A stretch of DNA of 56,984 nt, filler included, from Dugesia japonica (taxonomy: Eukaryota): NCBI GenBank assembly GCA_001938525.1. It is 3 parts of 3 records of this genome, joined end to end, with 100 filler letters (N's around TTAATTAATTAA, not from the genome) between each part and the next. Parts side by side here need not be neighbours in the genome. Positions count along the whole stretch, not along the records: positions 1 to 30,589 come from MQRL01642434.1; 2 more parts are not named here. One strand, given 5' to 3'. Under the pieces are notes generated by a model that saw nothing but the letters and a program-made list of their open reading frames with translations, did not search any database and was not told where the DNA came from. Position 1 is the stretch's first letter, and every line of letters starts with the position of its first letter. This document shows positions 1-28,034 of the stretch, one piece after another. The translations under genes and the position numbers were made by a program.

Positions 1-70
<70 letters not shown>
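1..70. repeat. (TAA)n/(TAT)n microsatellite
   Basis: Directly visible trinucleotide tract at the window start. Confidence 0.97.
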
Positions 71-2841: not shown

Positions 2842-4325
2842 TTATATTTTCCTCTTCTGATTTTTAACGCTACTTTTGTAAAACAATATTATACTGGCTG
2901 CTGTTATTGCCCCAATTGCTATACCGATAAGTCTTGCTAACCAATTCCGTTCTTTTCCCCTCATGTTTGCAGTAGGTACTACCTCATGTTTCAACTCCTC
3001 ATCCACTAAAATTTCCGTCTTTGAACTGATCCTTGTAAATTTCTTTAACCATTTATTCATATGTTCCTCTTGTTCCTTGTTTAACACATTCAATTGTTCC
3101 GTATTTAAATCAGTAGTATTGATCTGAATTCCATTTTTATTCCTTTTCTTTTTCTATTTCTGTTTGCTTGTTGTTTCAGAGATGTTTCCGATAATTCTCT
3201 TTTTTATAACTGTTGTTGAAACGATGTTCGATTTTCTTGTAATTATTCTTGGTTTATTATTTACTTTATTAGGTCTTCTTGATGATAATTTCTTTTTATT
3301 CCGTAGTAATACATGCTCAATTTTTACCCATAGTCCTTTTAATTGAAATAATTTTTTCGTTGTTCCGACAGGTAACTTCAACCATCTTTTAGCTGACTGT
3401 TTCTCCTTTACTGCCCAATCTTCAAAATCTAAGTATTGTGATACAATTATTTATCGTACCATATCTGATTTTATTTTGAACTGAAGAAATAGATATCTTA
3501 AAATTCTATTTCCTCTTTCTCTTAGAAAATCTATTCCAGTTCCACAGATATCCTTTCTTTCTAATTGAATTATTTTTTGTCTATGCCAATTCTTTAATCC
3601 ATCACTTTCCCATATTAACNCTGTTAATCCAGTAAAATCTATTTTCCAATGTTGTGATATATTATTTACTTCTTGTGATAAACAATTTCCATTATTGTCT
3701 CTCAATGTTGGTAGTCTTGATTCTCGAATGACGTATGAAATTTGGATACGTTTGTTATGATAGGTACTGTAAGCCCTTCTTTCTTTAAATTTCTTTAACT
3801 TTGTATTGTTTTTCGTTGTCCTAAATTCATTACGCCATACTTTCAATGTGAGTCCGTCATATTGGATTGCATAAAAGTGTTGTACTTGATCTGTTTCTAC
3901 TAACACTTCTAATTTCCAGTAATGTTTTTCCAGTCTTACTTGTATTGAATGACTCTTACTTGGTATTGCTGGTGTGATCGTAAATCCAATAAAAAATTTA
4001 TTATTACTAGCACTTCTCGTAACTCTTTCCAACCCTTTTTTTGATACTGTCAATATTCTATTATGCGAGTACCCAATATACACTATATATTCCGTAATAA
4101 TATTTTTATAGTCCAGACGTTTATCTCCGTTTACAAACTTTACGGTTACTATGATTTTTATAACATATATCCATTTACTCATCATTTTCAGTGATCGGTT
4201 TGGCGAAATAGTTGTTTTTGTAATTCTCTGTAAATTGTTTTTTTAAATTCATTCATCGTCATCATTCTAACTTCCGTATTTGCCAAAAACATTGCGATTA
4301 AGACTATTAAACATAAGACAAACAT
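2842..4325 (-). pseudogene. Putative type I membrane protein (signal peptide, ectodomain, TM, basic tail) at the end of the element's coding region
   Basis: MFVLCLIVLIAMFLANTEVR at 4325-4270 (my translation), ORF 3451..4185, then TM LIGIAIGAITAASIILFY (~2931-2878) and KSSVKNQKRKI-stop. Frameshifted. Confidence 0.55.
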
Positions 4326-4399
4326 AGTCGTTGTTGTTGTGAAGTATCTAATCCCAGTTGTTCTGTTACATCTTTGTTTTTGTTTTTTGCCAATTTCTT

Positions 4400-6980
4400 G
4401 AGCATAATTTAAATCAATCTCTTTGCGTTCATTTCCTTGTTAGTCTTTTGCTGAAAATTCTAGTAATGCAGAATTTTGTCTTTCTTCTCATTTCGTTGAT
4501 CCCCTTTGAAATCTCAGTTTATCCTTTGATTTTGTCGATTTTTGTTAGGACTTTGTCTATTGATGTGTCTCTTGCTTGCCACCTCTTCTGTGAGTCTCAA
4601 CATTTCGGATTGGTTCTAAGCTTTTGAGATCTTCCTCTTCAAGGAAAGGTTTACAATTTTCAATTTCTTTCATTAGTACTAAAAGTACTTTATCGCATTG
4701 TAAAATTACTTCCTTCATATTTTTTAGTTCGTCAGAAGAATCTTTTCCTGTTGAGTCTATTGTTTCAGGTCGTTGTCGTTTTTTCTCTTGGCCGATTTCT
4801 TGATCTTTAATTCAAATGTCTCTCTTGCTTGATTTGGTTTCCCTTGTCTTTGATTCTCCAAATATTTGTTGCCATATTTCTTCTTTTATTTTCTTCATCT
4901 CTAGTAAATCTGATCCGCTTAAAAGTGGAGGTCTCCCAGAGTCTTTGCAGTATTCCAGTAACCCACTCTTGATTCCCACCATAAAATCCATATCGCTATC
5001 TTCTTCACTTTGTGATATATTATTCCTATAATTTCTTTCTTTTCTTTCTTTTTCTTGTAGAACCATACGATTACTTATTTCATCAATTTTTTCTATAGCG
5101 TTTTGCAGCGGTCCTTCGTTATTTTCATTTTTTCTAGATTTGTTTTGAATTCTTTGACTTTTACTCTTAACAGTTTCTTTTTCTCGTTTGTTTTGCTTTT
5201 TTAAGTGGGCTTTTAATTTATCAAACGTCTGATAATCTTCTTGCTTCAATTTTNNNNNNNNNNNNNNNNNNNNNNNNNNNNNNNNNNNNNNNNNNNNNNN
5301 NNNNNNNNNNNNNNNNNNNNNNNNNNNNNNNNNNNNNNNNNTTTTTAACGATTTTAATGATTCTTTTCGATCGCGCATTTCTTGATTTTTGAGATGATCC
5401 TTCCACATTTGTTTTGGTTGCTGTTTTGTTTCTTCTGTAATTCTAAGATCAATGTTACTTTCTTTAAATTTATCATACAAATGCCATTCATTTTGCAGTT
5501 CCTGTAATGATCCTCCGAAATTTAATTTTTATACATTGGCCATTCTTTAAAGTCTTGTGCTAATTGTAGCGATCTTTCGTAGTTTTGACAGTTTTGAATT
5601 CTCATTCGACTTCCGTTCCCTTTTTCTCTCCTTTTTCTAGGTAAATTGACATCCTTGGCGATCCTCTTTTGTTCGTTTTTTCTGAATTTCCTTCGAATTT
5701 GCCAACTCTCTGATGATACTTTATCTTCTTCTGTATTTTCTTTATTTTCTATTTCTTGAATTTCTTTGTTAATGTATTTATTTTCTATTTTCTAAATATT
5801 TTGTTTTTGCTTTTTTCATCTGCTTTTAATTTTATTTGTAACATAGCTTTATGAAATTCGTCTACTGCTTCAACCAAATTATATGTTACTATATCTATAC
5901 AATCCAAACAGAAAGTTTTATATACGCTTTCCAAAATTGGAATCTTCACAACTTTCTCCTTTTCTTTGCCCATTTTGCACACATTATTTGTTCACATTTG
6001 ATTGTGTATTATCCATTGTTTTTGTCGTACCACTTATTGTAAAGATTCCTTTAGTTCCTTTTGAACAATACTATAACACCTATCACATAATTTGATCACA
6101 TCTTCCTTTTTGATTGGACATTTNNNNNNNNNNNNNNNNNNNNNNNNNNNNNNNNNNNNNNNNNNNNNNNNNNNNNNNNNNNNNNNNNNNNNNNNNNNNN
6201 NNNNNNNNNNNNNNNNNNNNNNNNNNNNNNNNNNNNNNNNNNNNNNNNNNNNNNNNNNNAAAAGTTGCTTTCCATTTTCTACTGGCATCGTGATTCATTT
6301 TTCGATAATTACTACCGTCTCCTTAGTTACAATCAAAATACTTCTTTTGATATCTACCACATTTCTCGTTGTCACAAATTCTATCAGACGAATAAATTTC
6401 TGTAGTTTTCTCTTTATCAACTGAGCTAATTTTAGACTCAATTTTTTTGGTAACCGAATGAAAGTATCCGTCATTTCTTCCAGCAATATTAATTTCGTTT
6501 CCATTGTCTTTTTTGTTTAATCTGGCCACAAACCCTCCTGAATTTGAAAATGTGACTGGTTCTATTTGCATTCATAATGGTTTTCCTGCTGTAAGTCCTC
6601 TCATATGGCTGTAACAACATGATAAATTTTTATTTATTATTCTGCAAAAATTAATCAAACATCGATTACAAAAATTCTTACATTGTTCTCTTTTTACTTT
6701 ATCAACTATTTCTATTTTTGAACACTGTCCACATGTTAAATTAGCATGTTCTAACTCTACTCATTTCTCTTTTCAAATCTAATAACTGATATACACTGCT
6801 CTTAAACAATAATAACATGATTTAATTAATAGACTTTTTATTAAAGGTATTGATGTTGATTTGATTTTATTATATAGTTTACATCGGTTCTCATTATTGT
6901 ATACGTTAACTTTTGGTCTAGCAGTAATCATATTTATACTTTGTCTTGATCTCAAAGGATATCTGTTTTCGTCATTAGAA
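4400..6980 (-). pseudogene. Post-integrase extension: Cys-rich (CxxC) region followed by charged coiled-coil region
   Basis: The frame continues past the integrase tail RYPLRSR into CYYC, CGQC, CKNFCNRC, CDNEKC, CDRC and CLDC motifs, then the K/E-rich ORF 4812..5480. Confidence 0.55.
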
Positions 6981-8130
6981 ATTTACGGTTTTTGATATTT
7001 CCGTTTCTGTTTCTTTATTTCTGTTGAAAGATCTACTTTAACGATTTTTGGTTCTTCATCTGTTGCTGCTGCTAACTTCCATCTTGTCACGTGCACTAAA
7101 CTTGGTTTCTTTAGTGGATTCCCTACTTCTTTCACTTTTAAATTCGTAGTTGTGGTATCTAATACTACATAAGGACCTCTATTTGGCCGTTTTAATTTGT
7201 TTGATGTGCTAACGTCTATTGATGGTGTATTTACCAAAACTAAATCTCCGATTTTAAATTCATGTGGTTTGGTATCTCTGTCATATAATTTCTTGTAACT
7301 CTCCTGGAAAGATTTTGCATTTGATTTTGCTGATTTTCACAAATCTTCCATATGTTCTTTATTACCAGTCACGTCTTCATTTTCTTCCGTATTCTTAGAT
7401 ATTGGTGGTTGATGTTCTAAATCAATCGGCATGTTGCATTCTCAACCATACATCAATTTAAATGGTGATGCTCTTGTTGCCGGATGTACACCCATCCTAT
7501 AAGCAAATAAACATAAGTTCAACTGTTTATCCCAATTTCTTTAATTTCTAGATACGTACGTCGACAGCATTCTGACTACAGTTTGATTAAATCGTTCCGT
7601 CATCCCATCAGTCTGCGGATGATACGCTGAAGTTCTCAATTTCTGAACGCTAAAGTAGCTTGTAATTTCCTTCATTAGCTCACTCATAAAATTTTTCCCT
7701 TGATCCGTTAAGATCTTCTTTGGTGGTCCGTATCGACTGAATAATTTTTCTACCAACACCTTTGCAATTGTGCCTGCTTTTTGGTCTTTTAACTCAAATG
7801 CTTCTGGATACTTTGATAGATAATCCACACCTACAATGTCCATTGCAATTATATCCATTGGAGCTGATGGTACTATTATTGGCTGTAATAGTGCCTTTGA
7901 CTTCTTGCCAGTGCCCCTTCTTGCTGCACATACTTTACACCGATTTACTTAATCTCTAACACAAGTAGTAATATGCGGCTAATAATATTTCGCTGGCAAT
8001 TTCGATTCCGTTTTCTTTGCAGACATGTGTCCTCCCAATAATTAATTGTGATACTGTTCCAGTATTTTAGTCTATCGACACATAGGGATCACTAATAACA
8101 TTTTCCCTCTTTCTTTCATCCTTAACCTCC
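6980..8130 (-). pseudogene. pol: Integrase (HHCC, DDE core, GPY/F) of giant element copy 1
   Basis: YHN..GGH..CKVC zinc-binding motif; IAMDIVG, ILTDQGKNF, SAYHPQTDGMTERFN; RGPYVV; small internal deletion after DIVG. Confidence 0.93.
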
Positions 8131-8199
8131 CTTTAACATTTTCATATCGTCCTCCCCGTTTTTTGAGGTGTTCATTCATTGCTTTTCCACAGTCAGTTT

Positions 8200-9450
8200 T
8201 ACTTCAATCAAAATGTTTTAGATATTCCGTGATTATTTTCACTTCTTCATCATTTCCTTGATCTTTCTTTAGTTCATTAAAATCTTTATCTTCAGCGAAA
8301 ATTATATATAATGTCGGTACTTCCCGATTCATTAGCTGTTGTAAATCGATTACCATTTTCTCTCCAAATTCTTTTGCTGTAGGCTCTTCTTTATATTCAT
8401 CAAATTTATCTCTTGACATAAAATTTACATTAATGCATATTCCTGTAATTTCATGGCCCATCTTGCCATTCGATTTATTTGTAATGGTTTCTGTCTGATC
8501 ATTGTTAATGGCTGATGATCTGTATATATTGTCAATTGATGTCNNNNNNNNNNNNNNNNNNNNNNNNNNNNNNNNNNNNNNNNNNNNNNNNNNNNNNNNN
8601 NNNNNNNNNNNNNNNNNNNNNNNNNNNGTTGAAAGGTTTTGCTAAAATATCCAAAAACTCGTTCCCAACCTTCCTCATCTAACTGACTCAATACTGATCC
8701 CATTGCATAACCACTTGCATCAGTTGATAGAACGAATAGTTTCTTTAAATCCGGTTGCTCTAATATAGGTGCTGTCATTAATTTATCCCGAATGATTTCA
8801 AATGCGGTTCGCTGTTCTTTTCCCCAATGGAATGTGACATCTAGTTTTACCAAGGATTGTATCGGCTTTACAATTATGGCGAATCCCTTAATAAACTTTC
8901 TATAGAAGTTTGCCATTCCTAGAAATATTTGTACATCATTCACCGTTTTTGGTACTGGAAGATTCTTTATTTTTTCAATAATTTTTGGATCTGGTTGTTT
9001 TCCACTTTCTGATATTAAATGGCCCAAATATGATACTTGATTCTTGGCCCATTCACATTTTGTAGTTTTCACTTTCAATTTCCATTCTCTCAATCTTACA
9101 AATACCTTNCTAAGATCCGTTAGGTGTGCATCAAATGTTGTCAAAAATAATAATAAATCATCAATATATACCATACATTGCGGTAACTCATGTGTTACGA
9201 AATTCGTACATCTCTGAAAAGATGATGGTGCATTTGTTAGTCCAAATGGCATTTTTGTAAATTGATACAAAATCTTTCCCGGCCGAAAATGCAGTCTTGT
9301 CTTTATTAGCCTCTTCAATTTCAATTGCTTCTTCACTAAGTTTTACTTGAGCCTGTGGTTGTCTGAATGGCCTAAGTTTAATTGGTGAATCATCAATTAG
9401 TGGTATTGAATGTTTTTTTACTGAACATATTCCTGATTCTTCATCTTTCC
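8200..9450 (-). pseudogene. pol: Reverse transcriptase and RNase H of giant element copy 1
   Basis: KMPFGLTNAPSSFQR, VYIDDLL, YLGHLIS, FLGMANFYRKFI; RNase H LSTDASGYAMGSVLSQ and IYTDHQPL..RMARW. The RT N-terminal part appears deleted. Confidence 0.95.
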
Positions 9451-9959
9451 AAGCAAAGATGTCTCGAAATTCTTCTAACAGCTCTACTAATCGTTTTTAT
9501 CCTTTTCCGCTAATATTTCTGATTGGATTTTAAATTTTCTATCTACGTCTTCTGTTTCTGTGGTCAGTATAACTTCCATTTTTGCTGCTCTTTGTTTTGA
9601 CATAGGTTTCATTTCTTCAATTTTTAATTTCTCTGCTTTCTCCTCCTCATCAAGAAAGGGTGTCAAAAATCCAATTTGGAATTAAAAAATATTGTAATAT
9701 TCTCTTCCGATGTATTTAACACGTTTATCGGTACTTGTCTTCTATCATCAACATACACCAATTCTTTGACTGCGGGTAGTTTATATCACTTTGTGAATCC
9801 TGGATGAGGCTTAAAATACATATTTCTTCTGTCATTCGTATTTGATTTTGCAACATAACACACATAGCTTTTTCTGGGTATTATGATTTTCTCCGGTATA
9901 TGTACCTCATCATCTTGAGTAAACAAGTTTTCTTTCGAACTAGTAATCTGCAATGTTGT

Positions 9960-10260
9960 CATATCTAAAAGCACATTTTTCATCAGTATAATATCAGTCC
10001 CCAATATACAATGTTCTTTCATTTCCATGATTTTCATATTGTGATCCACTTTTCTTCCATCAAATTCCACTTCACATTTTAATTTTCCAAATACCGCAGC
10101 TTGATTTCCATCTGCCACTATTACCTCCAAGTTACTGATTTCTATATATGGNCATCTAATTTTTGGGACTAAATTAAGATTCAATACTGATATGGTTGAA
10201 TCTGTGTCTAATAATGCTGATATCGGATTTCTATCTATCATTACGTCTATCATTATTCTC
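9960..10260 (-). pseudogene. pol: Main retropepsin-like aspartic protease of copy 1
   Basis: ALLDTDSTISVL (copy 2 has LLDTGAT), flap VADG, C-terminal CILGTD. Confidence 0.9.
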
Positions 10261-10397
10261 GATCCAATTTCCGAGTAAATACAAGATATCATTTTTGGTG
10301 GTTCATATGAATCCAAATTACTTGTTGATTGGATTTCTCGACTATTTCTTGTGTTTGTATGATTACGCGATCTTTTCGTAAATCCTTCTTGAAACCA

Positions 10398-10551
10398 GCA
10401 TTGCCTCTGAATGTGAGCGTATTTTCCACACAGATAACATTGTTTTCTGTCACTTTGATCATCAAATCTTTCTTCTAGTTTAATCGGATAATAACCCTTT
10501 CGATGGTTACATTGTTCTTCTATATGGTTGTTCCTCCTACATATCTGACAT
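10398..10551 (-). other. Two CCHC zinc knuckles in frame with the main protease
   Basis: My translation: CQICRRNNHIEEQC and CYLCGKYAHIQRQC, reading through without a stop into ORF 9786..10316. Confidence 0.88.
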
Positions 10552-10624
10552 CGTTGATTCTTAGTTCAAATTTTACGACTGGTGGTAGTAATAAGTTTAC
10601 TTATTTCTATTTTGCCGTCCGGAA

Positions 10625-11245
10625 AAGTCCTCGGCATCAAATCTAGCCCAATGATACAATCAAACAGCAAATACTCCATTATGTCTACTGGATGTGTGAG
10701 TATCGATTCATGAATTTCGGATGTCTGAGATTTTTTAATTTTTATATTTAATATTAAGATTGGTTNNNNNNNNNNNNNNNNNNNNNNNNNNNNNNNNNNN
10801 NNNNNNNNNNNNNNNNNNNNNNNNNNNNNNNNNNNNNNNNNNNNNNNNNNNNNNNNNNNNNNNNNNNNNNNNNNNNNNNNNNNNNNNNNNNNNNNNNNNN
10901 NNNNNNNNNNNNNNNNNNNNNNNNNNNNNNNNNNNNNNNNNNNNNNNNNNNNNNNNNNNNNNNNNNNNNNNNNNNNNNNNNNNNNNNNNNNNNNNNNNNN
11001 NNNNNNNNNNNNNNTTTTTTAAGAAAAGACTTGTGATAATCAATAAACAATTTATGGAGACTTTTGAGACTTTAAATTTAACTAATAGGGTGTATAAAAC
11101 AAATTGTTTCTGTCTCTATTTTACAATCCATTTCACCTATTATTTTATCTTGTTGTCCACTTTTAAGCACGAAAAATCTCATCGCTGTCTTACTGGCTCT
11201 TGTATCGATCATACAATTGATTTTACGACCATTTATCATTTAACG
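10625..11245 (-). pseudogene. Additional retropepsin-like domain(s) between the glycoprotein tail and the zinc knuckles
   Basis: MINGRKINCMIDTRASKT..SGQQDKIIGEMDCKIE..HPI on one side of the N gap and HPVDIMEYLLFDCIIGLDLM on the other. Confidence 0.7.
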
Positions 11246-11989
11246 TTTCATCAACATGCCACTACTTCGTGATGTTAATGGACATAAACTTTGTGTTTCC
11301 TCATGCTGTGAATTCACTTCATATTCAATAAACTCATTAAATTGTGTAGTTTTGTGTGGCGTAGTTTAAAAAATTTGCATATCATCTAATTTTTTCAATT
11401 TTATCTATGGACGAACTCTCAGTGGATATTCGCATCTTTCTTTATTTTTATTGATTTGTTCATCCAATTGTTGTAATTTTTCATTTAGATAATACGTTTC
11501 TGGAAAATAAAAAAATCGTTCCCCTTGATTTGAGTTCCATATTCGACTTGTTGTTTGTTTAGTTTGCTGTAATTTGCTCCTTGATGCTGGTATCGGTCTT
11601 TCCTAATTCGTCCTTAGAGTATGTGCCCGATGATTGGTTGCTAGTTCTTTTTTACAAAAATTCAGATTTTCATTTATAGCTGTATTCTTATAGTCATCAC
11701 GTTCTTGTTTGCTATCATTTCTTTGGTAATTTAGTTGATAATTTCCGCAATTAATTTCATCTTTATATTCATAGTGTTGGTTATTCACTGTTGCAAACTC
11801 TGCATTTCGTTGTCTTCCATCTGGATAATTATTGCCATCATCGTCACTACTATCATCATCATGACGTTTCCATGGGTGAAACATATCAAAATAAGACGTT
11901 TTCTGATCTTTCTGTTTCCTTAAACCTCTCCCAATTTCCCGCATTTTTGTTCTACAATTTCGCGATCTGTACCTTTTAATTTGCTTTAT

Positions 11990-13845
11990 TTCGTTAGCAA
12001 TTTTCTGGTATTATAGAGATCATTGGAGTAACTATTCAATACCTTTGACTTTGCCCATGCTGGAAATATTCCCATAACCATCGTCCATGAAACTCTTCGT
12101 TTCTTTTTATATAAATCAAAACAGGCTAATATTTGTGTTATTAAGACTTTTACGATAGTTACCATGAATATCACTCCTAATAAACCTGCCATAGCTTGAC
12201 CAAATATAATAAAACGTCCACACATTTTCTTCATTACATTTTCGGCCGCTTTCTGAAAATGATCCGTAGATAATGATCCGTAACTCATAATTTGGCCTGC
12301 CATCTGCCGCATTTCCTCCTCCTGCAATCTGTACTATGTTTGATAATATCTGCATTCATTTTACTGGGAACAACATATGATCCCTTGCTTTATCCAAATC
12401 CAATTGTTTATATACTCCACCTTTGACGATCTTAAACAGGACAAATTTATCTCCTCCTTTTAATTTCAATCTTGAAAAGTTTTTAACATTTCCACCGGCT
12501 ATTAATTTCTATTCCCATTAGGTAATGCAAAATAAGGTCCAAATACGTTTGAGCAATTTAATTTATTCGGTACATATTCTCTCGTGGATATTATTNNNNN
12601 NNNNNNNNNNNNNNNNNNNNNNNNNNNNNNNNNNNNNNNNNNNNNNNNNNNNNNNNNNNNNNNNNNNNNNNNNNNNNNNNNNNNNNNNNNNNNNNNNNNN
12701 NNNNNNNNNATTACTTCTCCAACAACCCGTCCAAATTGTCCTTCTTCCATAGGTAATAAAGGTGTTACGCTATCTGGGTTTGTAAGTGCAGTAGCCAATT
12801 TTGTTTTTAATATTTCCCTATTTAACATACAATCATTCCAGAGTAAATCATGATATGTAACTTCACATCTTGAGGTGACACTGCAGCTTTTGCCCTATCT
12901 AATCTCCTTTTACTCGCATAAATTCCTTTATAATTTGTTTTAAAAGCTAATTCGCCACATTTTGATGCCGTCTTTTTCCGAATTATTTTAATCATATCAT
13001 CTTTTCTAGTCGTCATCAATACGGTAGGAGTATNNNNNNNNNNNNNNNNNNNNNNNNNNNNNNNNNNNNACTCTTTAATTTTATCCACTCGTATTGTTTC
13101 TACTTCTTCTAAATCTACTACTCTTTTCTCGCGATATTCATCAAATGCAGTTTCTTTTAGAAAGGTCAAAATACAATCCTGATGATTAAAATGATATATT
13201 AAAGTATATTTTCCGGATGAACTTGAAAGATCCGTTGCCTTACAGTGTGGATACATTTTCATTGCTAATGTTTCTGTATCAAAATATGCATCATATTCCT
13301 TTAACTCTATTCTGTAACTTTCAATTGCAACTACATAATTGATTACTTTACCATTAACAGTGTATGTTCCTCGGGTGCACCCCCATGTTCATCTGTTATA
13401 CTTCCGGCTGCAAATATTTGTTGTTGAACAATATGACCCGCTTTTGCATTAACAATGACCCCATATCTTATTTGAACTTGTCCGTTAGTGAATCCATTTT
13501 GACAGTGTTGACAAGTTAGATAAATTGACCTTACATCTGTTCTGGCATCTATCATTGCCGTATAGCTTCGGGCTCCGCAATAAAATATTAAGACTCTCAT
13601 TGTTACTATACACTCTTGTATCTTTGCTTTATAATAATCAGATTCCTGATACACAAAATAATTCACACTTTTTCTTACTGGATTCATTCTTTCCGGATTA
13701 GCTTCAGGATACTCGTCTGTGTCTACCAATGAATATACTGTTTCCCAAATTTCCATTTTATCACTATCATAAGTTGTTATAGCTGCAGTTTTATTTATCA
13801 TCATAAATAATAATAAGATCATCATCATCATTGGTTGCCAATTAT
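11990..13845 (-). pseudogene. env: Chuvirus (Jingchuvirales)-like glycoprotein, env-like, with internal signal peptide and C-terminal TM
   Basis: Signal MMMMILLLFMMINKTAA, then YD(C/S)..YSL.D, ECIV..YCG..SY, C..GF..G, FAAGS, C..REIL..KLA....P, G.FG.V.GEV, GGVY...DL...RDHMLFP, FG..MAGLLG..IVK..I. This motif order is characteristic of chuviral G. Confidence 0.82.
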
Positions 13846-13869
13846 TAACTCTACTTGTGGTATGTGTTT

Positions 13870-14500
13870 CTACATCGACTTCATCAATATAATCCTTCAA
13901 TAATTTTTTCGCTTGTACAGGTATACTTTGTTTACAACTATATTTTGGTTTCATTTTCTCAATTAGTCCTGGGCAACCTCCAATTACTGCTAGCAAAGGT
14001 TCAATTTTATCCTTGATTATTTCGATAGCCGGTAGTTTGCGCATGTCAAATTTTGTTATCGGTCTACTTCGGGTAATTATTATAGATGCTTGTTTAATTA
14101 AATATGCAATCGCGATTGCAATTCTTGTTGGTGATGGACCTACTGCAATTAATCCATCTACTGCTTCTTCCGTTTCACTTTTCAAAGTAACTTTTGTTCC
14201 CTGCAAAGCAGGTAATTTTGTAATTAATGGTTCTAATATTGAAGCAATTTGTTCAGATTCTTCCGTTAATTTTGTGCTATCAATCCACATCTTTAGTTCT
14301 GGATATATTTTTAANNAAATTAGATGCATTAGTTGTTCCGTTGTCATTTCTTTTGATTCCATTTGTTCTAACAATTCTTGTGATACAGCTGTTAGTTGTT
14401 TATTTTGCATCACGTTTCTCTTTGATACCTTTTCTTGATTTGAAATTCCATTACTATTTGATGATCCTCATAATTTAGGTAACCTTCCTCGAAATCTTTT
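13870..14500 (-). pseudogene. Conserved helical domain of unknown function, fused upstream of the glycoprotein signal peptide
   Basis: ORF 13343..14413 runs from this domain into G; a homolog is present in copy 2 (48691..49095: IYP.LK.WI.S..L..E..Q.A.ILE..I.KLP). Confidence 0.65.
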
Positions 14501-14959
14501 ATCCATGAATGTTTCTGCATCTCTTGTCGTTGTTTTTTGAAATTCATTTCCAGTTGATTCCCTTGAGCTTCTACATCTTGTATATTTCTTCTGTCANTAC
14601 GTCTGACAAATTCATTTCATCTACCATTTCATCTGCAATTGTTTGTAATCTGGGTGATATTGGCTGTTCTGCATCAATATCCACTTTTTTGGGATTCCAA
14701 ATTAGAGATCCTTCAATCTTTTGACTTCTCATTCCTCTTTCTTTTGCAGGCTCTACTTGAGTTATTTTCGTCATTTCCTTGAGTTTCTGTTCCTTCTTCA
14801 TCATTCGCTGTACAAGATGAACTTTCCGATACTCGTATTGCTGTTTTTGCTGCAATTGTTGATTGAGCTGCCCAGTCTTTTGTGGAACGTCGTCCAGCCG
14901 TAAATTTGGGCTTTTCTGCTAATACTTTTGTAGTTTGTTTCTTCTTCAGCATTCCTTTA

Positions 14960-17900
14960 CCCACCACTGGGTGTATATATATTTTATTTGGATGCCTCAC
15001 TTGCACATCCAGTGTTCCGATAATATCTTTGTTTAGTAATTCCTGATTATAAAAAATAAGTGAATATGGTGGATTAAATGGCAATTTATTCTTTAATTGA
15101 TCCACTGTTTTATAAGCCATTGTTTCCACTCTTGTTTCTTGACTCGTTAGTGCGATTATTCTGAGAGTTATTTTGAGAGGTTTTTCTTCTTCCATCTCCC
15201 GATTTTGCCATTTAGTAATTATAATTTTAAATTGTTTCAGCCTCCAATCACATTCTTCTTTTAATCTTGATATTTGATAAGTTAATTCTCTGAACTCTTT
15301 TAATGATAAATCGCTGCTGATTAGTTGATCCAATAATTGTTGCACTTCTTGCTTTAGTACATTCTCTTGTTTATTGATGGTTGCAAATTGTTGTATTAAA
15401 CTTTGCGTGTTTCCAATATTGTGTCTGTTTCTTGTTGTTGTTGCTGCTATTGACTCGCACGGTTGGCTTATTGGACACAATTCTTTGATCGATTGATCTT
15501 GTGATCTAGATTTTAGTTTTTTTTTAATTTTTTTACTGCTACCGTTTCTCTGAAATCAACATTTAATTCCTCTACATGTATTTGTATTCCCCATGGCACC
15601 TGTGGATTAATTTCATCAATAAAGAACTGAATCGTTTTTCTACGCAACGTTTCTCTTGGTCGTTTCTTAGTATACGGATTCCTTTCTTGATCTTCTGCTG
15701 AAAACACGTAAACATCCATCATCGATTCTGGTCAAATACCTGAAACTTTTACTGAGTTCTCCTCATTTTCCTCAGTGATCTCTTCCCCACAATATATAAC
15801 GATATCTTCGTTTTTAGTTTCTAATCTAATTGCTTTCCTCTTGGCATTTGCGTGTTAATATAGTTAAGTATTTCATTTATTAACTTCTCCCAAGTTGTAG
15901 TTGTTTTAATCCTAAATTCCTTTTCCGATTCATCTGAGAAATATACTGTAACATTTACTGATTGTTTTGGTATGTTTTTAGCATGTATTCCTACCAATGT
16001 ATTAACTAATTCACAGAACATTTCTCCTCCAATTAATTTCAATTGATTTTAATTGATTTATTACTTCTTCTATCTTTAAATTTTGCATTTGTTTATAATT
16101 TTCTTTTATAACCATTCCTATCTTGGTTAATGCCAATCTATATGTCATCCGTGGTTCAATTTCTGTTGTTATTTCTGCTGTTGACCCAATTTCCTCGACT
16201 ATTATATGCGTAAAGCAATCCATTCGATCTATTTCCGCCATAAATATTTCCCTCATTCTTGCACCAATTTTATGTATTGGTTGTATTCGAAACCTTTTTG
16301 GCATTTCGTCATCGAGTTCTAATGTCAATTTTGTTATTTCTCCTGGTCGTAATCTAAATTCAATTAGATGTTCATTATTCTCGTTTAATTTATCTTTTTC
16401 TAATATCATATAATCACACATTATTCTATATTTATTCGATTTCTTCTGCAATGGCAGTTCGCTTATTATATCTCTCAATTCTCCAATAGTTGTAGTTTGA
16501 GAATTTTTAACGGTTTTAGATGTCAAACTTGATGTTGACCCTTTAACTTCGTTTATTACTGGATAAAAAAAATCGGCTCCAACAGTTGTCTCTTTTATCA
16601 GCTCTCGATAACTTTTCGTTATTTTTATCCATTTTCTCTTTTTTTCCCAATTTATTTGAAAATTAAAATATGCGTCGCATAAAAAATTCATCATCTTCCA
16701 ATAACTTTGTTTTGGAATAATCTCTTTTCAATTTATAGTTGTTTTTACTAAATGATCCCTTGCTTCCAAATATCGACTATTTTCTCTCAATTCATCATCG
16801 CACGTCACTAATTGTTCACTCGATTTGCTATGAATTTCTGTAGCTACGCTGCTAGCTTTCTTTTTATCTCTCTTTACTTTGTTCAGTACTTTACTCAAAA
16901 ACGCTCTCAACATACATATATGTGCTTTAGGCCTTTTCTTCGTTTCTGGTATTGAAATTGAGGTTTTTTTGTCATAATTATTATATACCATAACGTTTTT
17001 CTTATACTCCACGTCTAATGATCTCATGATTTGCTCTGTTGTTCGAATATGTAGATGTGACAGTACTGAGGCTTTAAATAAAAACAATCTCTCGTTTTCA
17101 AATAATGTAACTTCAGTAGCACCACCAGGCTTTAATCCATAGATGTAAATGTGCTCATTTACCACCTCTTTGTTAACAATTCTAACTGGTGAACAAATTA
17201 TATAATGTTCAAGTAGTTTTGGCCATTTTAACTCATTCAATGCTTCTAATAGTGCTTTCACCGTTGTATTCTTTAATGCCAATTTTCGAGGAATATTTTG
17301 GTATCCAAATCGGTAATTGTATTTAGATATTTGTTCTTCATCAAATAAGCCATATTTATGCAATCATGTGCGGGTTTTATTGCTTCCATCTCACTAATTT
17401 TATAATCATCCGTAGGCGACCTAAAATTTCCTTTTCATATTCATCGATCATATTCTTCCATTGTAATTAAGTTGTTACATCTATATGTCCTGGCTCTGCT
17501 AATTCAACAATATGATTCATTATCGACCAATATGCTTTTCGATCAATCTTATTTTTCTTTTTTCTAGTTCTTTTCATTTTGTTTCTATATATTCTCTCGT
17601 TTGTGGTTGTTATTTTATTGACGTTTTCATCTTCTCGTTTGTTACAACTTGATTGATCGTCATTTCCGCTCCTTGTTTTGTATTATCATCATGTTTTACT
17701 GAGTTCTTTGATACTTTTGTTTTCCATCTTTTTCTATAATAACCCTTTTAGCTGGTTTCTTTTGTCTGTCCAATAAAGTTTGTGCTCTCATCGAATGCTT
17801 AAAAAATGTCTTGTCCAACGATTAAATTATTTCATTTATTGTTCTATACTCAAAATGCAGGAACGCTGGCTGTTTAGTTTGATATAGTCTATCACTTTCT

Positions 17901-18350
17901 AACAACTTTAAAAGCTGAGTTTTTGCTGGTCGAATTCTATATACCGAAATGTGTTCTTTAAGATTATCCTGATCAATCACNCTTGATGATGAACATAGTA
18001 CATATTCGCATAATGGTTTCGGCCACTGCAGTTCATTTATCGTTGTTTTCAACCCTTTGACTGTTGGTGCATTAATTTCAATTTTCCTCATTATATTCTG
18101 ATATCACCATGGTATAGATTTGGTTTCATCATTAATTGTTGCGTATATGAATCTCTCGATTGACCGTCCCGCCACTTTTGGATCTTCTGAAATCTATTTT
18201 TTCAACGGCTCTATTATCATGATTTTGTAATCATCAGGATTAGTTTCTGTCATCAATTCCACTTCATACTCTTCCGCTTGAGTCTTACAATTCATTTTGC
18301 TAACAGCATCTACATTTGATTAAATGATTCATTATTTTAAAATATGCTTT
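14960..18350 (-). pseudogene. Tandem array of about five ubiquitin-like (beta-grasp) repeats
   Basis: The unit at ~15185-14960 (KITLRIIALTSQETRVETMAYKTVDQLKNKLPFNPPYSLIFYNQELLNKDIIGTLDVQ) aligns by eye with ubiquitin. The other units share TT/TV..L...I/L..L....Y.I....I.......Y/F.L/I.P(G). Confidence 0.6.
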
Positions 18351-18929
18351 CCACTCAATTACATCTCTAATATCTTCTACGAGTTCTAGTTTTTCTTCTA
18401 TCTGTCGTCGAATTGCAGGATAATTTTCCAAAGACTTATCGTCTAAAATCTTCTTGGAACGTATCATATTAATTTGTCCAGCATTAGAATTCGCCATTAC
18501 TCTTGCTCTCAATCTATCCTGAGCTATTTGTTGTTCTTCCACTTGTTGTCACAGATACTCTTGCTCTTGTTTCAATTTTTCAAACGTTTTTTGCTCCTCA
18601 TTCTGAGTCTCTTGTAACATATTTATTTGATGCTGAGGCTTGGCTCTACTACTATTTATTTCCTGCTTTAATGCTTCATTTTGCTGTCTCATTTTCTTAA
18701 TTGTTGGATTTAAATTTGGTTTTGNNNNNNNNNNNNNNNNNNNNNNNNNNNNNNNNNNNNNNNNNNNNNNNNNNNNNNNNNNNNNNNNNNNNNNNNNNNN
18801 NNNNNNNNNNNNNNNNNNNNNNNNNNNNNNNNNNNNNNNNNNNNNNNNNNNNNNNNNNNNNNNNNNNNNNNNNNNNNNNNNNNNNNNNNNNNNNNNNNNN
18901 NNNNNNNNNNNNNNNNNNNNNNNNNNNNN

Positions 18930-20060
18930 TTTCCCACAATTATAACAAGTCATATTTGATGATTGCCAGCTCACTTGTTTGTTGTTATTATTATTCTATT
19001 TAAAATTATTCGTTTGTCCTCTTGTATTCCCAGGTGATAATACCTTCAATAATAGCTGGGCTCTTGCTATAAAATCAGATACCTTAAGAACATTTTTAGT
19101 TTGTTCATCTTGTTCTTCTATTTGAAACACTTTTGATTGAAGAAAGTCAACATTGTGATATACTCTCGCTGAATTTATGGCCAATTCTACTGTTTGCGAC
19201 TGAGTTAAATGCACATGTCTCTTTACGTACGCATTTCCCAACCCTTTTATAAATGCTCCAATTAAAACTTCTTCATTAATATTATCTCAAATAGTTATTT
19301 TCCCAAGTCTTCGCAATTCAGCCGCAAATGCTTGAAATGATTCATCTTTATGCTTTCGTCTGTTCATAAAATCTTGCATCTCCTGACCTTGTAATGCAGG
19401 TGCTTTAAAAATATCTAATAACAATGTTTTAGCCTCTTCCCATGTTTTTACTTCTTTATCTTTCTCAGTGGCTTTATCCAAATAAATAGTTTTATTAGCT
19501 CTAACTAAATACAGTGGTAAACGCTCTACTGCTGTTTTATCGCTTCAACAGCATGCGTTGATATCAATTTCATAGTTTGTGATGAAATCGAGTATTTTAT
19601 CTGGATCTCCGTCATATTTATCACCACTGAAATATGTTCTCCATTCTTTACGTTTATCGTTCATATCCGATTCATGTTGTCTACTATTTGACGACATTTT
19701 ATTTAATTCTTTGATTTCCTCTTGACCGCTTAAATTTTCTGCTTGGCTTTTTGATTCCGAATTCGATAAAAAATGCGACACAAGTACTGTATTATTTCTT
19801 TCTACTATCTGATTTTGATTTTCAATATTGAGTCTGTTTCAATATTTTCCCTTGATTCTGAGGATTCCATTGTTATTCTCAAAGGAAAGCAGTTAGGTGA
19901 TTGATTTGTTTCTGAAGATATTGGCTTTTTAGATATCCTTGATTCCTTTCTTGTAAGTGATGATGCTCTTTGAGATTTTGCTTTGTGCTCTTTTCTACTT
20001 CCAACAGTAGATCTTGTATAATATCTGGGCTTTTCTGAATCTTCAATGGCTATCTTGGTA
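18930..20060 (-). pseudogene. gag: Gag (retrotransposon capsid plus first CCHC knuckle) of giant element copy 1
   Basis: KYDGDP..F...YE, LPLYL, TWEEAK..L...F, DESFQAFAAELRRL, FIKGL, T.ELAI..A, then CYNCGK before an N gap. ORFs 19781, 19481, 19241, 18974 and 18542 are all in one frame. Confidence 0.9.
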
Positions 20061-20449
20061 TAACAATTGTACTGTTCTCTTTAATTTGTAATATAATACT
20101 ATACTGTCCTTTTCCCTTAAATATAAAATAAAAGCCTCTCGGCCTATACATATTAATTAACAATAAAATAATCAATTAGCCTTAATCTTAAGTTATTCAT
20201 TTTTACTAATTCCTCTATTCAGTCTATCATCTTAGAATTAATGCTTTTTTCTTAGTTTTTAAGATGATACTGCCTTTTATGTAATATCAACTTAATTCTT
20301 ATAATCGAATTTTAAACCAATTAATTTATTATTTTTCAATACTATTCAGTCTATGCTTACATCTTATGCTATCTATTTTCTTAAATAAAGACTAAAATAT
20401 TTTTAATTTAACTCAATCTTTTTAACTGGCGCTTATTCAGTTTATTATA

Positions 20450-21640
20450 CTATATTTTATTCATCGTTTTAATTTATTCATTTATTTTCTTATATTTTAT
20501 ATTGCACTCTGATTATTACAATGTTTTTTTACATTATCTCTATTTTGTTTTGCTTCTAATTTTACTTTACATTTGTCAAGATAATATTTCAAAATTTCTC
20601 TTCTTAAAAATTAAAACCTTCGATTCTCTAAGTTTGGGTCTCTCAAATTTATGTGTAATTTCAACTAGATTCTACAATTCCTACTCACATTTGGATTTTC
20701 TTTCAAATCCATGTTATTCTTCTTCACTCCAAGCGCTAATAACTGATCGATTTTCTTTCATCCCCCAAAAATATTTGCGAGTTTTCTTTCAACACCAAGG
20801 CTTTCTTTCAAGCCCATTTCTAAAGTTCGTCTTCACACTTATCCCCAACCTTTGTGTACTTCACATAAATTAAACCTTCATAGTTTTTCAAATAAAATAA
20901 TTTTCTCAAGTTNNNNNATTCCCATACAAAGAATACTGCTTCCAAAATTTCCAACAAAGCAACTCCAAATTCTACAACTTTTCTTTCCTTCCGACAAATT
21001 TCAAACATTTTCCAATAATAAAATGAATATGTGAAGTACCATGCTAACATGAACAACGCTCCATTTTAGCATATATATGACAAAGAATTCTAATCAGAAT
21101 CAACACTACCCTGCTCGCAAACTCTAAAATTCTGTAAAATAATTCCACGATATAAATGTCACTAGTAAAATAACATGCACCATTTGTCAAGAAACATTTA
21201 TAGGGGAAGCATACAGAACCATCTGAACAAGAATTAAGGAACATTTAAAAAAAAGAAAGTGAAGTATTCAAACACTTTCAACACAAACATGAAATTTCAC
21301 CAGAACAACATCACATTACATGGAAAACACTAGGAACAGGCTACATTTTTACACTAAATAGAAAGAAACATGAATAATTACTTATTAAAGAAGACAATTC
21401 AAAATTAAATGTAATTTATAATAATTAAATAATTAAATTTAAATAAAATATAAAAAAATTAAAATTAACTAATTAAAATTTAGAAAAAATAAATTTATTC
21501 AAAAAAATTACTATTATAAGAATAATTATTGAATAAATTAAAAAGTCAATTTCTAAAGAAGATAAGGTCGAAATATCGAATTGTTATCAAATACCAAGTA
21601 AAACAAACTTTTGATCGAAGCTTTTATTTTATTATTTGGT
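20450..21640 (+). mobile_element. Penelope-like element remnant (GIY-YIG endonuclease and 3' pLTR)
   Basis: KITCTICQETFIGEAYRTI*TRIKEH..ESEVFKHFQHKH..RKKHE*LLIK...KLN at ~21165-21420, followed by a hammerhead-like motif. The left boundary is approximate. Confidence 0.8.
21547..21583 (+). ncRNA. Degenerate minimal hammerhead ribozyme motif (Penelope type)
   Basis: CAATTT-CTAAAGA-A-GATAAGGTC-GAAA-TATC-GAATTG: stem I of 6 bp, stem II of 3 bp, palindromic stem III, and a core G5>A change. Confidence 0.6.
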
Positions 21641-22132
21641 TATTTTCAGATAAATTCAAAAATTCCTGATATACTTAATTTTTATATACTCGAACTAATG
21701 CATTGTGGTTTGACGTTTTCAAGCGTGTTTCTTAATTTCATTTTCGTCACAATGTAATAAAATAAATGAAGTGAAGTTTCACTCCAAGAGAATAAATAAT
21801 ACGAGCACTTCAAGAGGGTAAATGAAAATCAATGCATTATTTTTCAGATGAAATGAATATAATGTTCTCAGAAAAGTCGATAACGTTGTAATGCTATTCA
21901 TGAAATTTATAAAGATATATTCNNNNNNNNNNNNNNNNNNNNNNNNNNNNNNNNNNNNNNNNNNNNNNNNNNTATTCAAAATCATAGAACACATGATGCC
22001 CACCGATATACTCAAATAAATGAAATCACATTTTCGTTACTAGAACCGAAACTGATTTTTATGTAAATGTAATAAACATTTCTATCATTATTTCTATCTT
22101 TATTTGTGAAAGACAATTATAATATAGGGTTA

Positions 22133-22134
<2 letters not shown>

Positions 22135-22201
<67 letters not shown>

Positions 22202-22270
22202 NNNNNNNNNNNNNNNNNNNNNNNNNNNNNNNNNNNNNNNNNNNNNNNNNNNNNNNNNNNNNNNNNNNNN

Positions 22271-22335
<65 letters not shown>
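22135..22335. repeat. (TAT)n microsatellite with internal N gap
   Basis: Directly visible. Confidence 0.97.
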
Positions 22336-22749
22336 GGTTAAAATACTATTTTTTATCAAGTTATGAACACAAATAATTCTATATACTTAAAATCTATAAT
22401 AAAAAATTGTATTTTCTTTCAGTCATTTAAGTAAAATACAAATGACAATTGATAAAGCATTTTTCATTGTATTTTTTGACCGCGTTCAAATGAATTATGT
22501 TATCTAATTCATTTATTTTACTTTACATTAATCAGATGTACGCCACCAAATTGATTAATTAGCAAATTACCTTGAAATTTCTAAACTAAAACATATCACG
22601 CCAACAAACAACTCTAAACATTTAAAATTTTAAAATTTTAATTTAAAATAAAAAAGTTTATAATTTAAATAAACCAATATAATTTTGATAAAATATAATG
22701 AATTTTGTAATAAAATTCTATTATCGTTTGAATCTATCAAAAAGTCATC

Positions 22750-22787
22750 ATATTCCTGAAGAAGACAATTGTCGAAAATTTGAATAT
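22750..22787 (+). ncRNA. Minimal hammerhead ribozyme motif (Penelope pLTR type)
   Basis: ATATTC-CTGAAGA-A-GACAATTGTC-GAAA-ATTT-GAATAT: intact CUGANGA and GAAA core, stem I ATATTC/GAATAT, stem II GAC/GTC, palindromic AATT stem III. Flanks (AAAAGTCA and TTTTGATCGAAGCTTTT) are shared with the 21547 copy. Confidence 0.72.
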
Positions 22788-23008
22788 TGTATACAAAAAT
22801 ACAATTTTTTTGATCGAAGCTTTTTCTTTATTTTAATGAAAGAATTTTAATAAATAAAATTATTTGTATTCTTAAATTGATAAAAAAAAATATTATTGTT
22901 ATGATTATTATATAATTATTTATTTATGTAAAATTTAAAATCTCACAACTCTATAAGATTTTTTTTATTTATTATTACAAATTTTTTGATAAAAGTGAAA
23001 AAAAAGAC

Positions 23009-27966: not shown

Positions 27967-28034
27967 TATTAGTTTTATGTAAATAGTTTCATTATTATTA
28001 GTTTTATGTAAATAGTTTCATTATTATTAGTTTT
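27967..28034. repeat. Short tandem duplication (~29 bp unit)
   Basis: ATTAGTTTTATGTAAATAGTTTCATTATT is repeated. Confidence 0.85.

What the first reader, a model, noticed from the sequence alone, without database searches (positions are those of the whole stretch)
2842..20060. Giant Gypsy-type retroelement with a viral fusion glycoprotein between Gag and Pol, possibly one mega-polyprotein
Seen: about 17 kb of minus-strand coding-like sequence with no obvious spacer, ordered Gag-CCHC, Ubl array, helical domain, signal peptide, chuvirus-like G, TM, extra protease(s), 2xCCHC, PR, RT, RH, IN, Cys-rich, coiled coil, second signal/TM protein. Established: env genes of retroviruses, errantiviruses and BEL/Pao elements normally lie 3' of pol, and giant single-ORF Gypsy elements (Burro) are known from planarians. 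Inference: this is a decayed endogenous enveloped retrovirus-like lineage with a gag-env-pol layout, translated as a membrane-threading polyprotein of over 5000 aa. It is the best candidate for an undescribed system here, though it must be compared with Burro-like elements.
Basis: partly seen in the sequence, partly recalled or inferred. Interest (0 to 1): 0.95.

Follow-up and report, generated by a model that had tools for sequence, protein, structure and literature searches.

The report
Decayed giant Gypsy element, gag-env-pol
This is a dead, heavily mutated copy of a giant Gypsy-type retrovirus-like element whose viral fusion glycoprotein lies between gag and pol. That layout is real and inherited, but it has already been published for planarian Burro elements and other flatworm, nematode and bryozoan elements.

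Summary
The minus strand from 20080 to 2845 is one retroelement remnant. It runs Gag capsid-like, a lineage-specific repeat region, and a signal peptide plus chuvirus-like fusion glycoprotein (Pfam PF24664) with a membrane anchor. Then come an extra protease remnant, two CCHC knuckles, PR, RT, RNase H and IN. A 4 kb tail follows with Cys-rich and charged stretches and two more hydrophobic segments.

It is not an ORF. It consists of 43 open pieces, the longest 374 aa, separated by at least 22 frame changes and 37 stops of all three kinds.

G is not a nested insertion. Eleven natural relatives carry the same G collinearly with gag and/or pol inside single ORFs of up to 4,844 aa. Their RTs are also the closest to this RT.

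The architecture is not new. Arkhipova and Yushenova 2019 described env in frame between gag and pol in Burro. Chary and Hayashi (eLife 2026) described GAG-ENV-POL Ty3/gypsy elements in Platyhelminthes, Nematoda and Bryozoa.

Not confirmed: zinc knuckles next to Gag, the Ubl fold (weak hints only), LTRs, and the host. Direct comparison with Burro was not possible. Verdict: a decayed member of a known kind, of low interest.

The parts
2845..20080 (-). Whole retroelement remnant (internal region only; no LTRs identified). All genes are broken: 43 open pieces, at least 22 frame changes and 37 in-frame stops.
   Evidence: Open-run excess over shuffles; chain of open pieces; A-rich strand skew from about 2 to 21 kb; collinear tblastn to relatives from 19.8 to 7.0 kb.
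18999..19838 (-). Gag capsid-like region (broken: 2 in-frame stops).
   Evidence: Retrotrans_gag E=0.011 and Ty3_capsid E=0.045; tblastn to the N-termini of P0004 and P0015, E=8e-7 and 2e-5; break counts.
18725..18929 (.). N-run (205 N) just 3' of the capsid-like region, where relatives carry their zinc knuckles. Not in the program's gap list.
16227..18103 (-). Three copies of a module of about 93 aa (17825-18103, 17025-17303, 16227-16499). Lineage-specific, with no relatives or family hits.
   Evidence: blastp between pieces, E=3e-21 and 3e-4; alignment A3 with 55% mean column identity; no hits.
14953..16048 (-). Two pieces with weak ubiquitin-like (beta-grasp) hints (15824-16048 and 14953-15192).
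   Evidence: Rad60-SLD E=0.071, RA_2 0.037, PI3K_rbd 0.11; UBL_UBAC1 E=0.14. All are below threshold. No PDB hit.
13832..14467 (-). Helix-rich region directly upstream of G, shared with some relatives. Function unknown; a BCL2-like identity could not be shown.
   Evidence: HMMER alignments of P0013, P0004 and P0010 reach into it; the AF2 model is all-helical but low confidence; no Pfam hit at E<=5.
11989..13831 (-). Env-like fusion glycoprotein G (Monjiviricetes_fusion, chuvirus-like). Signal-like segment at 13775-13831 and membrane anchor at 12139-12195. Broken: 4 frame changes and 1 stop. Two assembly gaps lie inside it and read in frame.
   Evidence: PF24664 at E=1e-12, 5.5e-4 and 2.7e-9 in collinear model order; 1815 of 1842 bases lie under relatives' alignments; hydrophobic segments; gap test.
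10569..11239 (-). Extra retropepsin-like remnant, split by the 249-N gap. It corresponds in position to the DDI-like Asp_protease that follows G in relatives.
   Evidence: gag-asp_proteas E=0.022; weak blastp to protease domains of P0039, P0006 and P0001; relatives carry 2-4 proteases after G.
10398..10550 (-). Two CCHC zinc knuckles, the only ones in the window. They lie downstream of G and directly upstream of PR.
   Evidence: Motif scan of all minus frames. In relatives the knuckles lie only upstream of G.
9987..10256 (-). Retroviral-type aspartic protease (PR). The piece that carries it and the knuckles shows no break.
   Evidence: Asp_protease_2 E=1.1e-4, gag-asp_proteas 3.2e-4, RVP 3.8e-3; break counts.
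8428..9496 (-). Reverse transcriptase plus Ty3/Gypsy-type RNase H. Broken: 2 frame changes, at least 1 stop, and one internal deletion of about 85 codons relative to four relatives. One assembly gap inside reads in frame.
   Evidence: RVT_1 E=2.7e-20 (model positions 100-203 only), RT_RNaseH_2 1.2e-17, RT_RNaseH 3.1e-7; tblastn; counts; gap test.
6986..8206 (-). Integrase (zinc-binding, core and C-terminal SH3-like parts). Broken: 8 stops in the homology-supported frame.
   Evidence: rve E=5.2e-8; MLVIN_C E=3.4e-4; tblastn E down to 4e-82; counts.
2845..6985 (-). 3' tail with no detectable relatives. It holds a Cys-rich piece (6575-6760), a Lys/Glu-rich stretch (about 4560-5991), and a putative signal/anchor-bounded module between hydrophobic segments at 4281-4337 and 2884-2940. 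Broken: at least 5 frame changes and 14 stops.
   Evidence: Open-run excess; translations; hydrophobic segments; no hits; counts.

Best explanation
Window 2845-20080 (minus strand) is a single old, inactivated copy of a giant Ty3/Gypsy (Metaviridae-type) endogenous retrovirus-like element. It belongs to the kind that carries a mononegavirus-type (chuvirus-like, Pfam Monjiviricetes_fusion) fusion glycoprotein between gag and pol. This is the Burro-like, GAG-ENV-POL kind.

Shown: the domain order; its collinearity with natural relatives that keep these domains in single ORFs; the closeness of this RT to the RTs of G-bearing relatives; and the decay of this copy.

Inferred, from the conserved internal signal-like segment and anchor and from how viral polyproteins with internal signals are known to be processed: in intact members Gag is made in the cytosol. 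The internal signal then takes the G ectodomain into the ER lumen. The anchor stops transfer, so the proteases, RT, RNase H and integrase that follow stay cytosolic. Host signal peptidase and the element's own aspartic proteases would cut the pieces apart.

None of this can happen from this copy, because every gene except the short knuckle-PR piece is broken.
For: - Pfam domains in collinear order on one strand.
- 38 relatives of the G piece. Eleven are long ORFs showing knuckle, G, 2-4 proteases, RT, RH and IN in one frame: P0010 (2627 aa), P0033 (2146), P0006 (2855), P0030 (3243) and P0039 (4844). Gag capsid plus knuckle plus G in one frame: P0004 and P0015.
- All align collinearly to the window, and only on the minus strand.
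- The six G-bearing relatives outrank all 120 RT hits from a 5.8-billion-protein search, with 205-224 bits against 179 or fewer.
- Signal-like and anchor segments bracket G in the window and in relatives.
- PR-like remnant, knuckles and PR are contiguous, in the same frame, and about 20 nt apart. That leaves no room for an LTR between G and pol.
- Stops of all three types occur.
- The published descriptions match (PMC6431247; PMC13524379).
Against: - No LTR pair, primer-binding site or target-site duplication was found, so the element's ends are undefined.
- About 8.6 kb (the middle region and the 3' tail) has no detectable relative. These parts could be lineage-specific cargo or foreign insertions.
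- The zinc knuckles sit downstream of G here but upstream of G in every relative that has them.
- Burro's dUTPase, MATH, BIR, ankyrin and BCL2-like motifs were not detected in the window.
- The host is unknown, and no Burro reference could be compared.
- Both structure models were too poor to use.
- The relatives' ORFs come from a prokaryotic-style gene caller on metagenome contigs.
Confidence: 0.85

Rival explanations
1. G is an independent endogenous viral element, or part of a second element, that landed inside or next to an ordinary gag-pol Gypsy copy. On this reading the gag-env-pol order is an accident of this locus.
For: The knuckles lie just upstream of PR, as in an ordinary gag-pol element, and downstream of G, unlike any relative. 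Chuvirus-like glycoprotein insertions are common in invertebrate genomes (PMC7642597 and PMC10084718).
Against: Eleven natural relatives have the same G collinear with gag and/or pol inside one ORF. This RT is closest to the RTs of exactly those relatives. G, the PR-like remnant, the knuckles and PR follow one another without any spacer that could hold an LTR. Strand composition is uniform across the whole span.
Confidence: 0.04
2. The element is composite. The core (Gag, G, proteases, pol) belongs to the GAG-ENV-POL lineage. The middle repeat region (about 18.9-14.5 kb) and/or the 3' tail (6985-2845) are unrelated sequences, such as other transposons or captured host fragments, that merely lie on the same strand.
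For: No relative, family or structure hit exists for any piece of these two regions. In relatives P0004 and P0015 only about 350-600 residues separate Gag from G, against about 1,700 codons here.
Against: The strand, the A-rich skew and the excess of open runs match the core. Burro-type elements are known to carry long lineage-specific cargo inside the polyprotein (PMC6431247). Relatives also continue 430-1,530 aa beyond IN in the same ORF and carry hydrophobic segments there.
Confidence: 0.2
3. The copy is less decayed than it looks. Many of the apparent frameshifts would then be errors of a gappy draft assembly, or some stops would be read through under a variant code.
For: The piece has 21 N-runs, including single Ns. 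This fits a draft assembly in which indel errors are plausible. TGA is over-represented among in-frame stops, at 17 of 37 against an expected share of 24%.
Against: All three stop codons interrupt the frames: TGA 17, TAG 9, TAA 11. The integrase alone has 8 stops without any frame change. An internal deletion of about 85 codons removes the first part of RT relative to four relatives. Identity to the nearest relatives is only 36-47%, and several conserved positions are lost.
Confidence: 0.05

Closest known systems
Burro / GYPSM1 giant Gypsy-like LTR retrotransposons of planarians (Grohme et al. 2018; Jurka 2007; Arkhipova and Yushenova 2019, PMC6431247)
   Same: - Giant internal region.
- Gag at the N-terminus.
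- A Ubl-type motif upstream of env (weak here).
- An env-like region with hits to mononegavirus fusion glycoproteins, placed between gag and pol and in frame in intact members.
- PR-RT-RH-IN after it, and long extra cargo.
- Decayed copies with stops and frameshifts are reported in Dugesia japonica.
- AT-rich host DNA fits planarians (my own knowledge, not tested).
   Different: - dUTPase between PR and RT, MATH, BIR, ankyrin, Smc and BCL2-like motifs were not detected in the window. Ankyrin is seen in relative P0039.
- The knuckles lie after G rather than after Gag.
- There is a three-copy module of about 93 aa.
- No LTRs were seen.
- Direct sequence comparison was not possible with these tools, so family membership is untested.
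GAG-ENV-POL Ty3/gypsy 'errantiviruses' of Platyhelminthes, Nematoda and Bryozoa (Chary and Hayashi, eLife 2026, PMC13524379; Sacco et al. 2022 for nematodes, as cited there)
   Same: - A Ty3/gypsy pol with an env captured from a virus, placed between gag and pol.
- The arrangement is inherited within host-associated clades.
- That paper describes the chuvirus-like glycoprotein as gB-like in structure and finds it next to gypsy pol genes.
   Different: - Those elements were defined as intact, multi-copy, LTR-flanked and 5-14 kb between LTRs, with separate ORFs allowed.
- This one is a much larger, fully decayed single copy without visible LTRs.
- The gB-like fold of this G could not be tested here.
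Mosquito BEL/Pao elements carrying a Chuviridae-like glycoprotein (Dezordi et al. 2020, PMC7642597)
   Same: The same kind of captured glycoprotein (chuvirus-like) associated with an LTR retroelement.
   Different: A different retroelement superfamily (BEL/Pao, not Ty3/Gypsy) and a different host phylum. Env is not described there as in frame between gag and pol.
Drosophila gypsy-type errantiviruses
   Same: A Ty3/Gypsy backbone plus a captured viral fusogen, making a retrovirus-like element.
   Different: Their env is F-type (baculovirus-like), lies 3' of pol, and is expressed from a spliced separate ORF.

Membership tests
Ty3/Gypsy (Metaviridae-type) LTR retroelement | Pol domain order PR-RT-RNase H-IN | tested here: met
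   Pfam hits in that order on the minus strand from 10.3 to 7.0 kb.
Ty3/Gypsy (Metaviridae-type) LTR retroelement | Gypsy-type RT-linked RNase H domains, and nearest RT relatives are Gypsy elements | tested here: met
   RT_RNaseH_2 E=1.2e-17 and RT_RNaseH 3.1e-7. All 120 listed RT relatives carry PF00078, most with PF17919/PF17917 as well. Named ones are Gypsy-type pol annotations.
Ty3/Gypsy (Metaviridae-type) LTR retroelement | Gag with a capsid domain and CCHC nucleocapsid knuckles | tested here: inconclusive
   The capsid-like region is supported weakly by Pfam and by tblastn. Two knuckles exist but lie 8.5 kb downstream, after G. An N-run covers the place where relatives have theirs.
Ty3/Gypsy (Metaviridae-type) LTR retroelement | Long terminal repeats flanking the internal region, plus a tRNA primer-binding site | tested here: not met
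   No direct repeat pair beyond AT-rich low-complexity matches. No tRNA gene or evident primer-binding site. Only 2.8 kb of 3' flank is available and the copy is old, so absence is weak evidence.
Burro (planarian giant Gypsy) | Giant internal region with one ORF of about 4,900-5,100 aa | tested here: inconclusive
   The span is at least 17.2 kb, with 4,864 residues in open pieces. These are split into 43 pieces. The largest ORF among relatives is 4,844 aa.
Burro (planarian giant Gypsy) | Env-like region with mononegavirus glycoprotein similarity between gag and PR | tested here: met
   PF24664 between the capsid-like region and PR. It is in frame in relatives.
Burro (planarian giant Gypsy) | Ubi2/SUMO-like (PF11976) motif upstream of env | tested here: inconclusive
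   PF11976 at E=0.071 (13.4 bits, cut-off 23.8) in one piece, and UBL_UBAC1 at E=0.14 in another. The AF2 model was too poor to use.
Burro (planarian giant Gypsy) | dUTPase between PR and RT; MATH, BIR, ankyrin, Smc and BCL2-like motifs | tested here: not met
   None was reported by Pfam for any window piece. Relatives show no dUTPase either, and only P0039 has ankyrin. Decay lowers sensitivity.
Burro (planarian giant Gypsy) | Sequence similarity to Burro-1..4 / GYPSM1, and a planarian host | not testable with these tools
   No Burro reference came back as a named hit, and none may be fetched. The host was not identifiable.
Pfam PF24664 Monjiviricetes_fusion (viral fusion glycoprotein) | Score above the family's gathering cut-off (27 bits) | tested here: met
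   47.3 and 36.0 bits for two pieces, 18.5 for a third. Model positions 5-150, 328-377 and 524-580 appear in collinear order.
Pfam PF24664 Monjiviricetes_fusion (viral fusion glycoprotein) | Type I membrane glycoprotein layout: N-terminal signal, ectodomain, C-terminal anchor | tested here: met
   Hydrophobic segments at 13775-13831 and 12139-12195 bracket the domain. The same is seen in relatives.
GAG-ENV-POL errantivirus-like elements (Chary and Hayashi) | Order gag, env, pol on one strand with a Ty3/gypsy pol | tested here: met
GAG-ENV-POL errantivirus-like elements (Chary and Hayashi) | Env of the HSV gB-like (class III) fold | tested here: inconclusive
   The AF2 model of the N-terminal G piece had pLDDT 46. 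Sequence and profile searches of PDB found nothing. The gB likeness of chuvirus-type G is taken from PMC13524379 only.

The most novel reading that the evidence does not exclude
This lineage may carry a second membrane protein module. It would be fast-evolving, bounded by a signal-like and an anchor-like segment, and lie downstream of integrase in the same frame as pol. That would give these giant elements two envelope-type proteins, one before pol and one after.

The window has such a pair about 470 codons apart. Three relatives (P0010, P0030, P0039) have pairs 280-350 aa apart after IN. No sequence similarity links them.

Together with the knuckles placed after G, this could mark an undescribed sub-architecture within the Burro-like kind.
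Probability: 0.15. Interest if true: 0.5.

Novelty: new member of a known kind. Interest (0 to 1): 0.22.

Why it matters
Little is new for the field. An in-frame env between gag and pol in giant flatworm Gypsy elements was published in 2019, and GAG-ENV-POL elements in several phyla were described in 2023-2026.

The result does help the scan. It also shows that G and pol descend together, and that natural relatives with single ORFs of up to 4,844 aa exist in public metagenome assemblies. One of them is mislabelled as a Flavobacteriaceae protein.

Two details might repay a descriptive follow-up. One is the zinc knuckles placed after G. The other is the recurring pair of hydrophobic segments after integrase.

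Tried and rejected
- LTR search by exact-seed repeats and by sensitive self-blastn. It found only microsatellites and AT-rich low-complexity matches. One 58%-identical 500-nt direct match (2274-2763 vs 23045-23519) lies in 15%-GC DNA and was judged spurious.
- tRNA and Rfam scans found nothing.
- Host identification from names or sources of relatives failed.
- AlphaFold2 of the helical-plus-G piece and of the repeat module gave pLDDT 46 and 50. No fold search was run on them, because low-confidence models give meaningless matches.
- PDB sequence and profile searches for the Ubl candidate, the repeat module, the G family and the 3' protein found nothing meaningful.
- Large-database searches with the 3' protein piece and the repeat-module piece found no relatives.
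- Comparison of the post-integrase modules of relatives with each other and with the window showed no significant similarity.
- A variant genetic code was rejected, because all three stop codons interrupt the frames and frame changes occur as well.
- The nested-insertion reading of G was rejected.
- Pfam scans of the flanks found nothing.

Full report
OBSERVATION

The piece is AT-rich (about 30% GC). From about 2 to 21 kb it has a strong strand skew that makes the minus strand A-rich. It holds 21 N-runs.

No ORF longer than 374 aa exists. Even so, the minus strand from 20080 to 2845 is clearly coding-like. Residues in open runs of 60 or more exceed dinucleotide-level shuffles several-fold in all three large parts:
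- middle: 1136 vs 163+/-112
- G to IN: 2104 vs 297+/-129
- 3' tail: 1286 vs 159+/-106

The short 5' part points the same way (369 vs 43+/-54). The plus strand shows no such excess.

DOMAINS

I searched each open piece separately. Pfam finds the following, in order along the minus strand:
- Monjiviricetes_fusion (PF24664) in three pieces, with collinear model positions 5-150, 328-377 and 524-580. Two of the three are above the curated cut-off.
- Two CCHC knuckles and a retropepsin.
- RVT_1 plus the Gypsy-type RNase H domains.
- The integrase core and an MLV-IN-like C-terminal domain.

At relaxed thresholds the 5' end shows Retrotrans_gag (E=0.011) and Ty3_capsid (E=0.045). A protease-like fragment lies between G and the knuckles.

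Hydrophobic segments sit directly before the G domain (signal-like) and at its end (anchor). Two more lie in the 3' tail.

The only knuckles in any minus frame are the two at 10398-10550. None adjoins the capsid-like region, where a 205-N run stands instead.

The region between Gag and G contains a genuine three-copy module of about 93 aa. Ubiquitin-like hints are limited to sub-threshold Pfam matches in two other pieces.

ASSEMBLY GAPS

- Three gaps (8544-8627, 12596-12709, 13034-13069) are crossed by single-frame alignments to 5-10 relatives, with homology on both sides. As written they are continuous and in frame.
- The 249-N gap at 10766-11014 has flanks in different frames. The flanks weakly match adjacent parts of one retropepsin domain, so its written length is probably too long.
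- Gaps 5254-5341, 6124-6259 and 18725-18929 cannot be tested. I filled no gap.

STATE OF THE GENES (counts only)

A best chain of open pieces has 43 pieces and 4,864 residues, with at least 22 frame changes and 37 in-frame stops.

| Gene | Breaks along alignments to relatives |
|---|---|
| Gag capsid-like | 2 stops |
| G | 4 frame changes, 1 stop |
| Knuckle-PR piece | none |
| RT-RH | 2 frame changes, 1 stop, one internal deletion of about 85 codons |
| IN | 8 stops |

The stops are TGA 17, TAG 9 and TAA 11, so recoding does not explain them.

RELATIVES

An exhaustive HMMER search with the G piece found 38 proteins.

Eleven are long ORFs. Pfam shows G followed by a DDI-like Asp_protease and one to three more retropepsins, then RT, RH and IN, all in one frame. 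In five of them a CCHC knuckle lies upstream of G. A cluster member, P0039, is a 4,844-aa ORF that also has ankyrin repeats.

P0004 and P0015 align to the window's capsid-like region with their N-termini and to G further on. They therefore carry Gag and G in one frame.

All relatives map collinearly, and only to the minus strand.

The six G-bearing relatives score higher against the window's RT-RH piece than any of 120 RT relatives retrieved from 5.8 billion proteins. That RT search covered only proteins of 131-416 aa. G and pol therefore descend together, and G is not a nested insertion.

The PR-like remnant, knuckles and PR follow each other in one frame within about 20 nt. This leaves no room for an LTR between G and pol.

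MECHANISM (inferred)

In intact members the conserved internal signal-like segment and the anchor would put the G ectodomain in the ER lumen. Gag (before) and the proteases and Pol (after) would stay cytosolic. Signal peptidase and the element's own proteases would do the cutting. This follows from what is established for viral polyproteins with internal signals and was not tested here. This copy cannot express any of it.

COMPARISON WITH WHAT IS KNOWN

- Arkhipova and Yushenova 2019 (PMC6431247) describe Burro/GYPSM1 of planarians. They report a 4,873-5,140 aa ORF1, Gag with knuckles, Ubi2/SUMO and BCL2-like motifs, and an env region with hits to mononegavirus fusion glycoproteins. [quoted passage not shown] They also report dUTPase between PR and RT, and decayed fragments in Dugesia japonica.
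- Chary and Hayashi (PMC13524379) report GAG-ENV-POL Ty3/gypsy elements in Platyhelminthes, Nematoda and Bryozoa. They state that the chuvirus-like glycoprotein is gB-like and occurs next to gypsy pol genes. They cite Sacco et al. 2022 for nematode elements.

Differences from published Burro:
- no dUTPase, MATH, BIR, ankyrin or BCL2-like hit in the window;
- knuckles after G;
- a three-copy module;
- no LTRs.

Membership in Burro proper could not be tested. No reference sequence was available to the tools, and the host could not be named.

WHAT LED NOWHERE

- No LTRs, tRNA genes or Rfam matches.
- Both AF2 models were poor, so I ran no fold search.
- PDB searches were empty.
- The 3' protein and the repeat module have no relatives.

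VERDICT

This is a real, correctly read, but decayed member of a known kind. The headline novelty claim does not hold. Interest is low.

Noticed in passing
window 18725-18929: A 205-N run lies inside the finding's range but is missing from the program's list of gaps. It covers the place, just after the capsid-like region, where relatives carry their zinc knuckles.
   Followed up: partly
window 4281-4337 and 2884-2940; relatives P0010, P0030, P0039 (and one segment in P0006): A pair of strongly hydrophobic segments 280-470 residues apart recurs downstream of integrase. In relatives it lies in the same ORF as pol. This suggests a second signal/anchor-bounded module. No sequence similarity links the modules.
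   Followed up: partly
window 10398-10550: The only two CCHC knuckles lie downstream of G, directly before PR. In the five relatives that have knuckles, they all lie upstream of G.
   Followed up: yes
window 22000-24000: A block of about 15% GC with palindromic self-similarity (22382-23949 against its own reverse complement). It is flanked by (ATT)n arrays at 22134-22335. A (TAA)n array lies at 1-74.
   Followed up: no
window 21300-30589, minus strand: A mild excess of open runs over shuffles (974 vs 268+/-137 residues), with no Pfam hit for the eight minus-strand open pieces tested there. This may be other decayed coding DNA upstream of the element.
   Followed up: partly
relative P0010 (NCBI HBK71150.1): A 2,627-aa knuckle-G-PR-RT-RH-IN polyprotein is deposited as a hypothetical protein of a Flavobacteriaceae metagenome-assembled genome. 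It is almost certainly a eukaryotic retroelement contig binned by mistake.
   Followed up: no
L001 gene table: In the contig of relative P0039, a 923-aa knuckle-bearing ORF ends 54 nt before the called start of the 4,844-aa G-pol ORF and lies in a different frame. Gag and G-pol are therefore separate there, while other relatives have knuckle and G in one frame. The DNA was not examined.
   Followed up: no
window 2845-20080, minus strand: TGA makes up 17 of 37 in-frame stops, against an expected share of about 24% from base composition. The cause was not explored.
   Followed up: no
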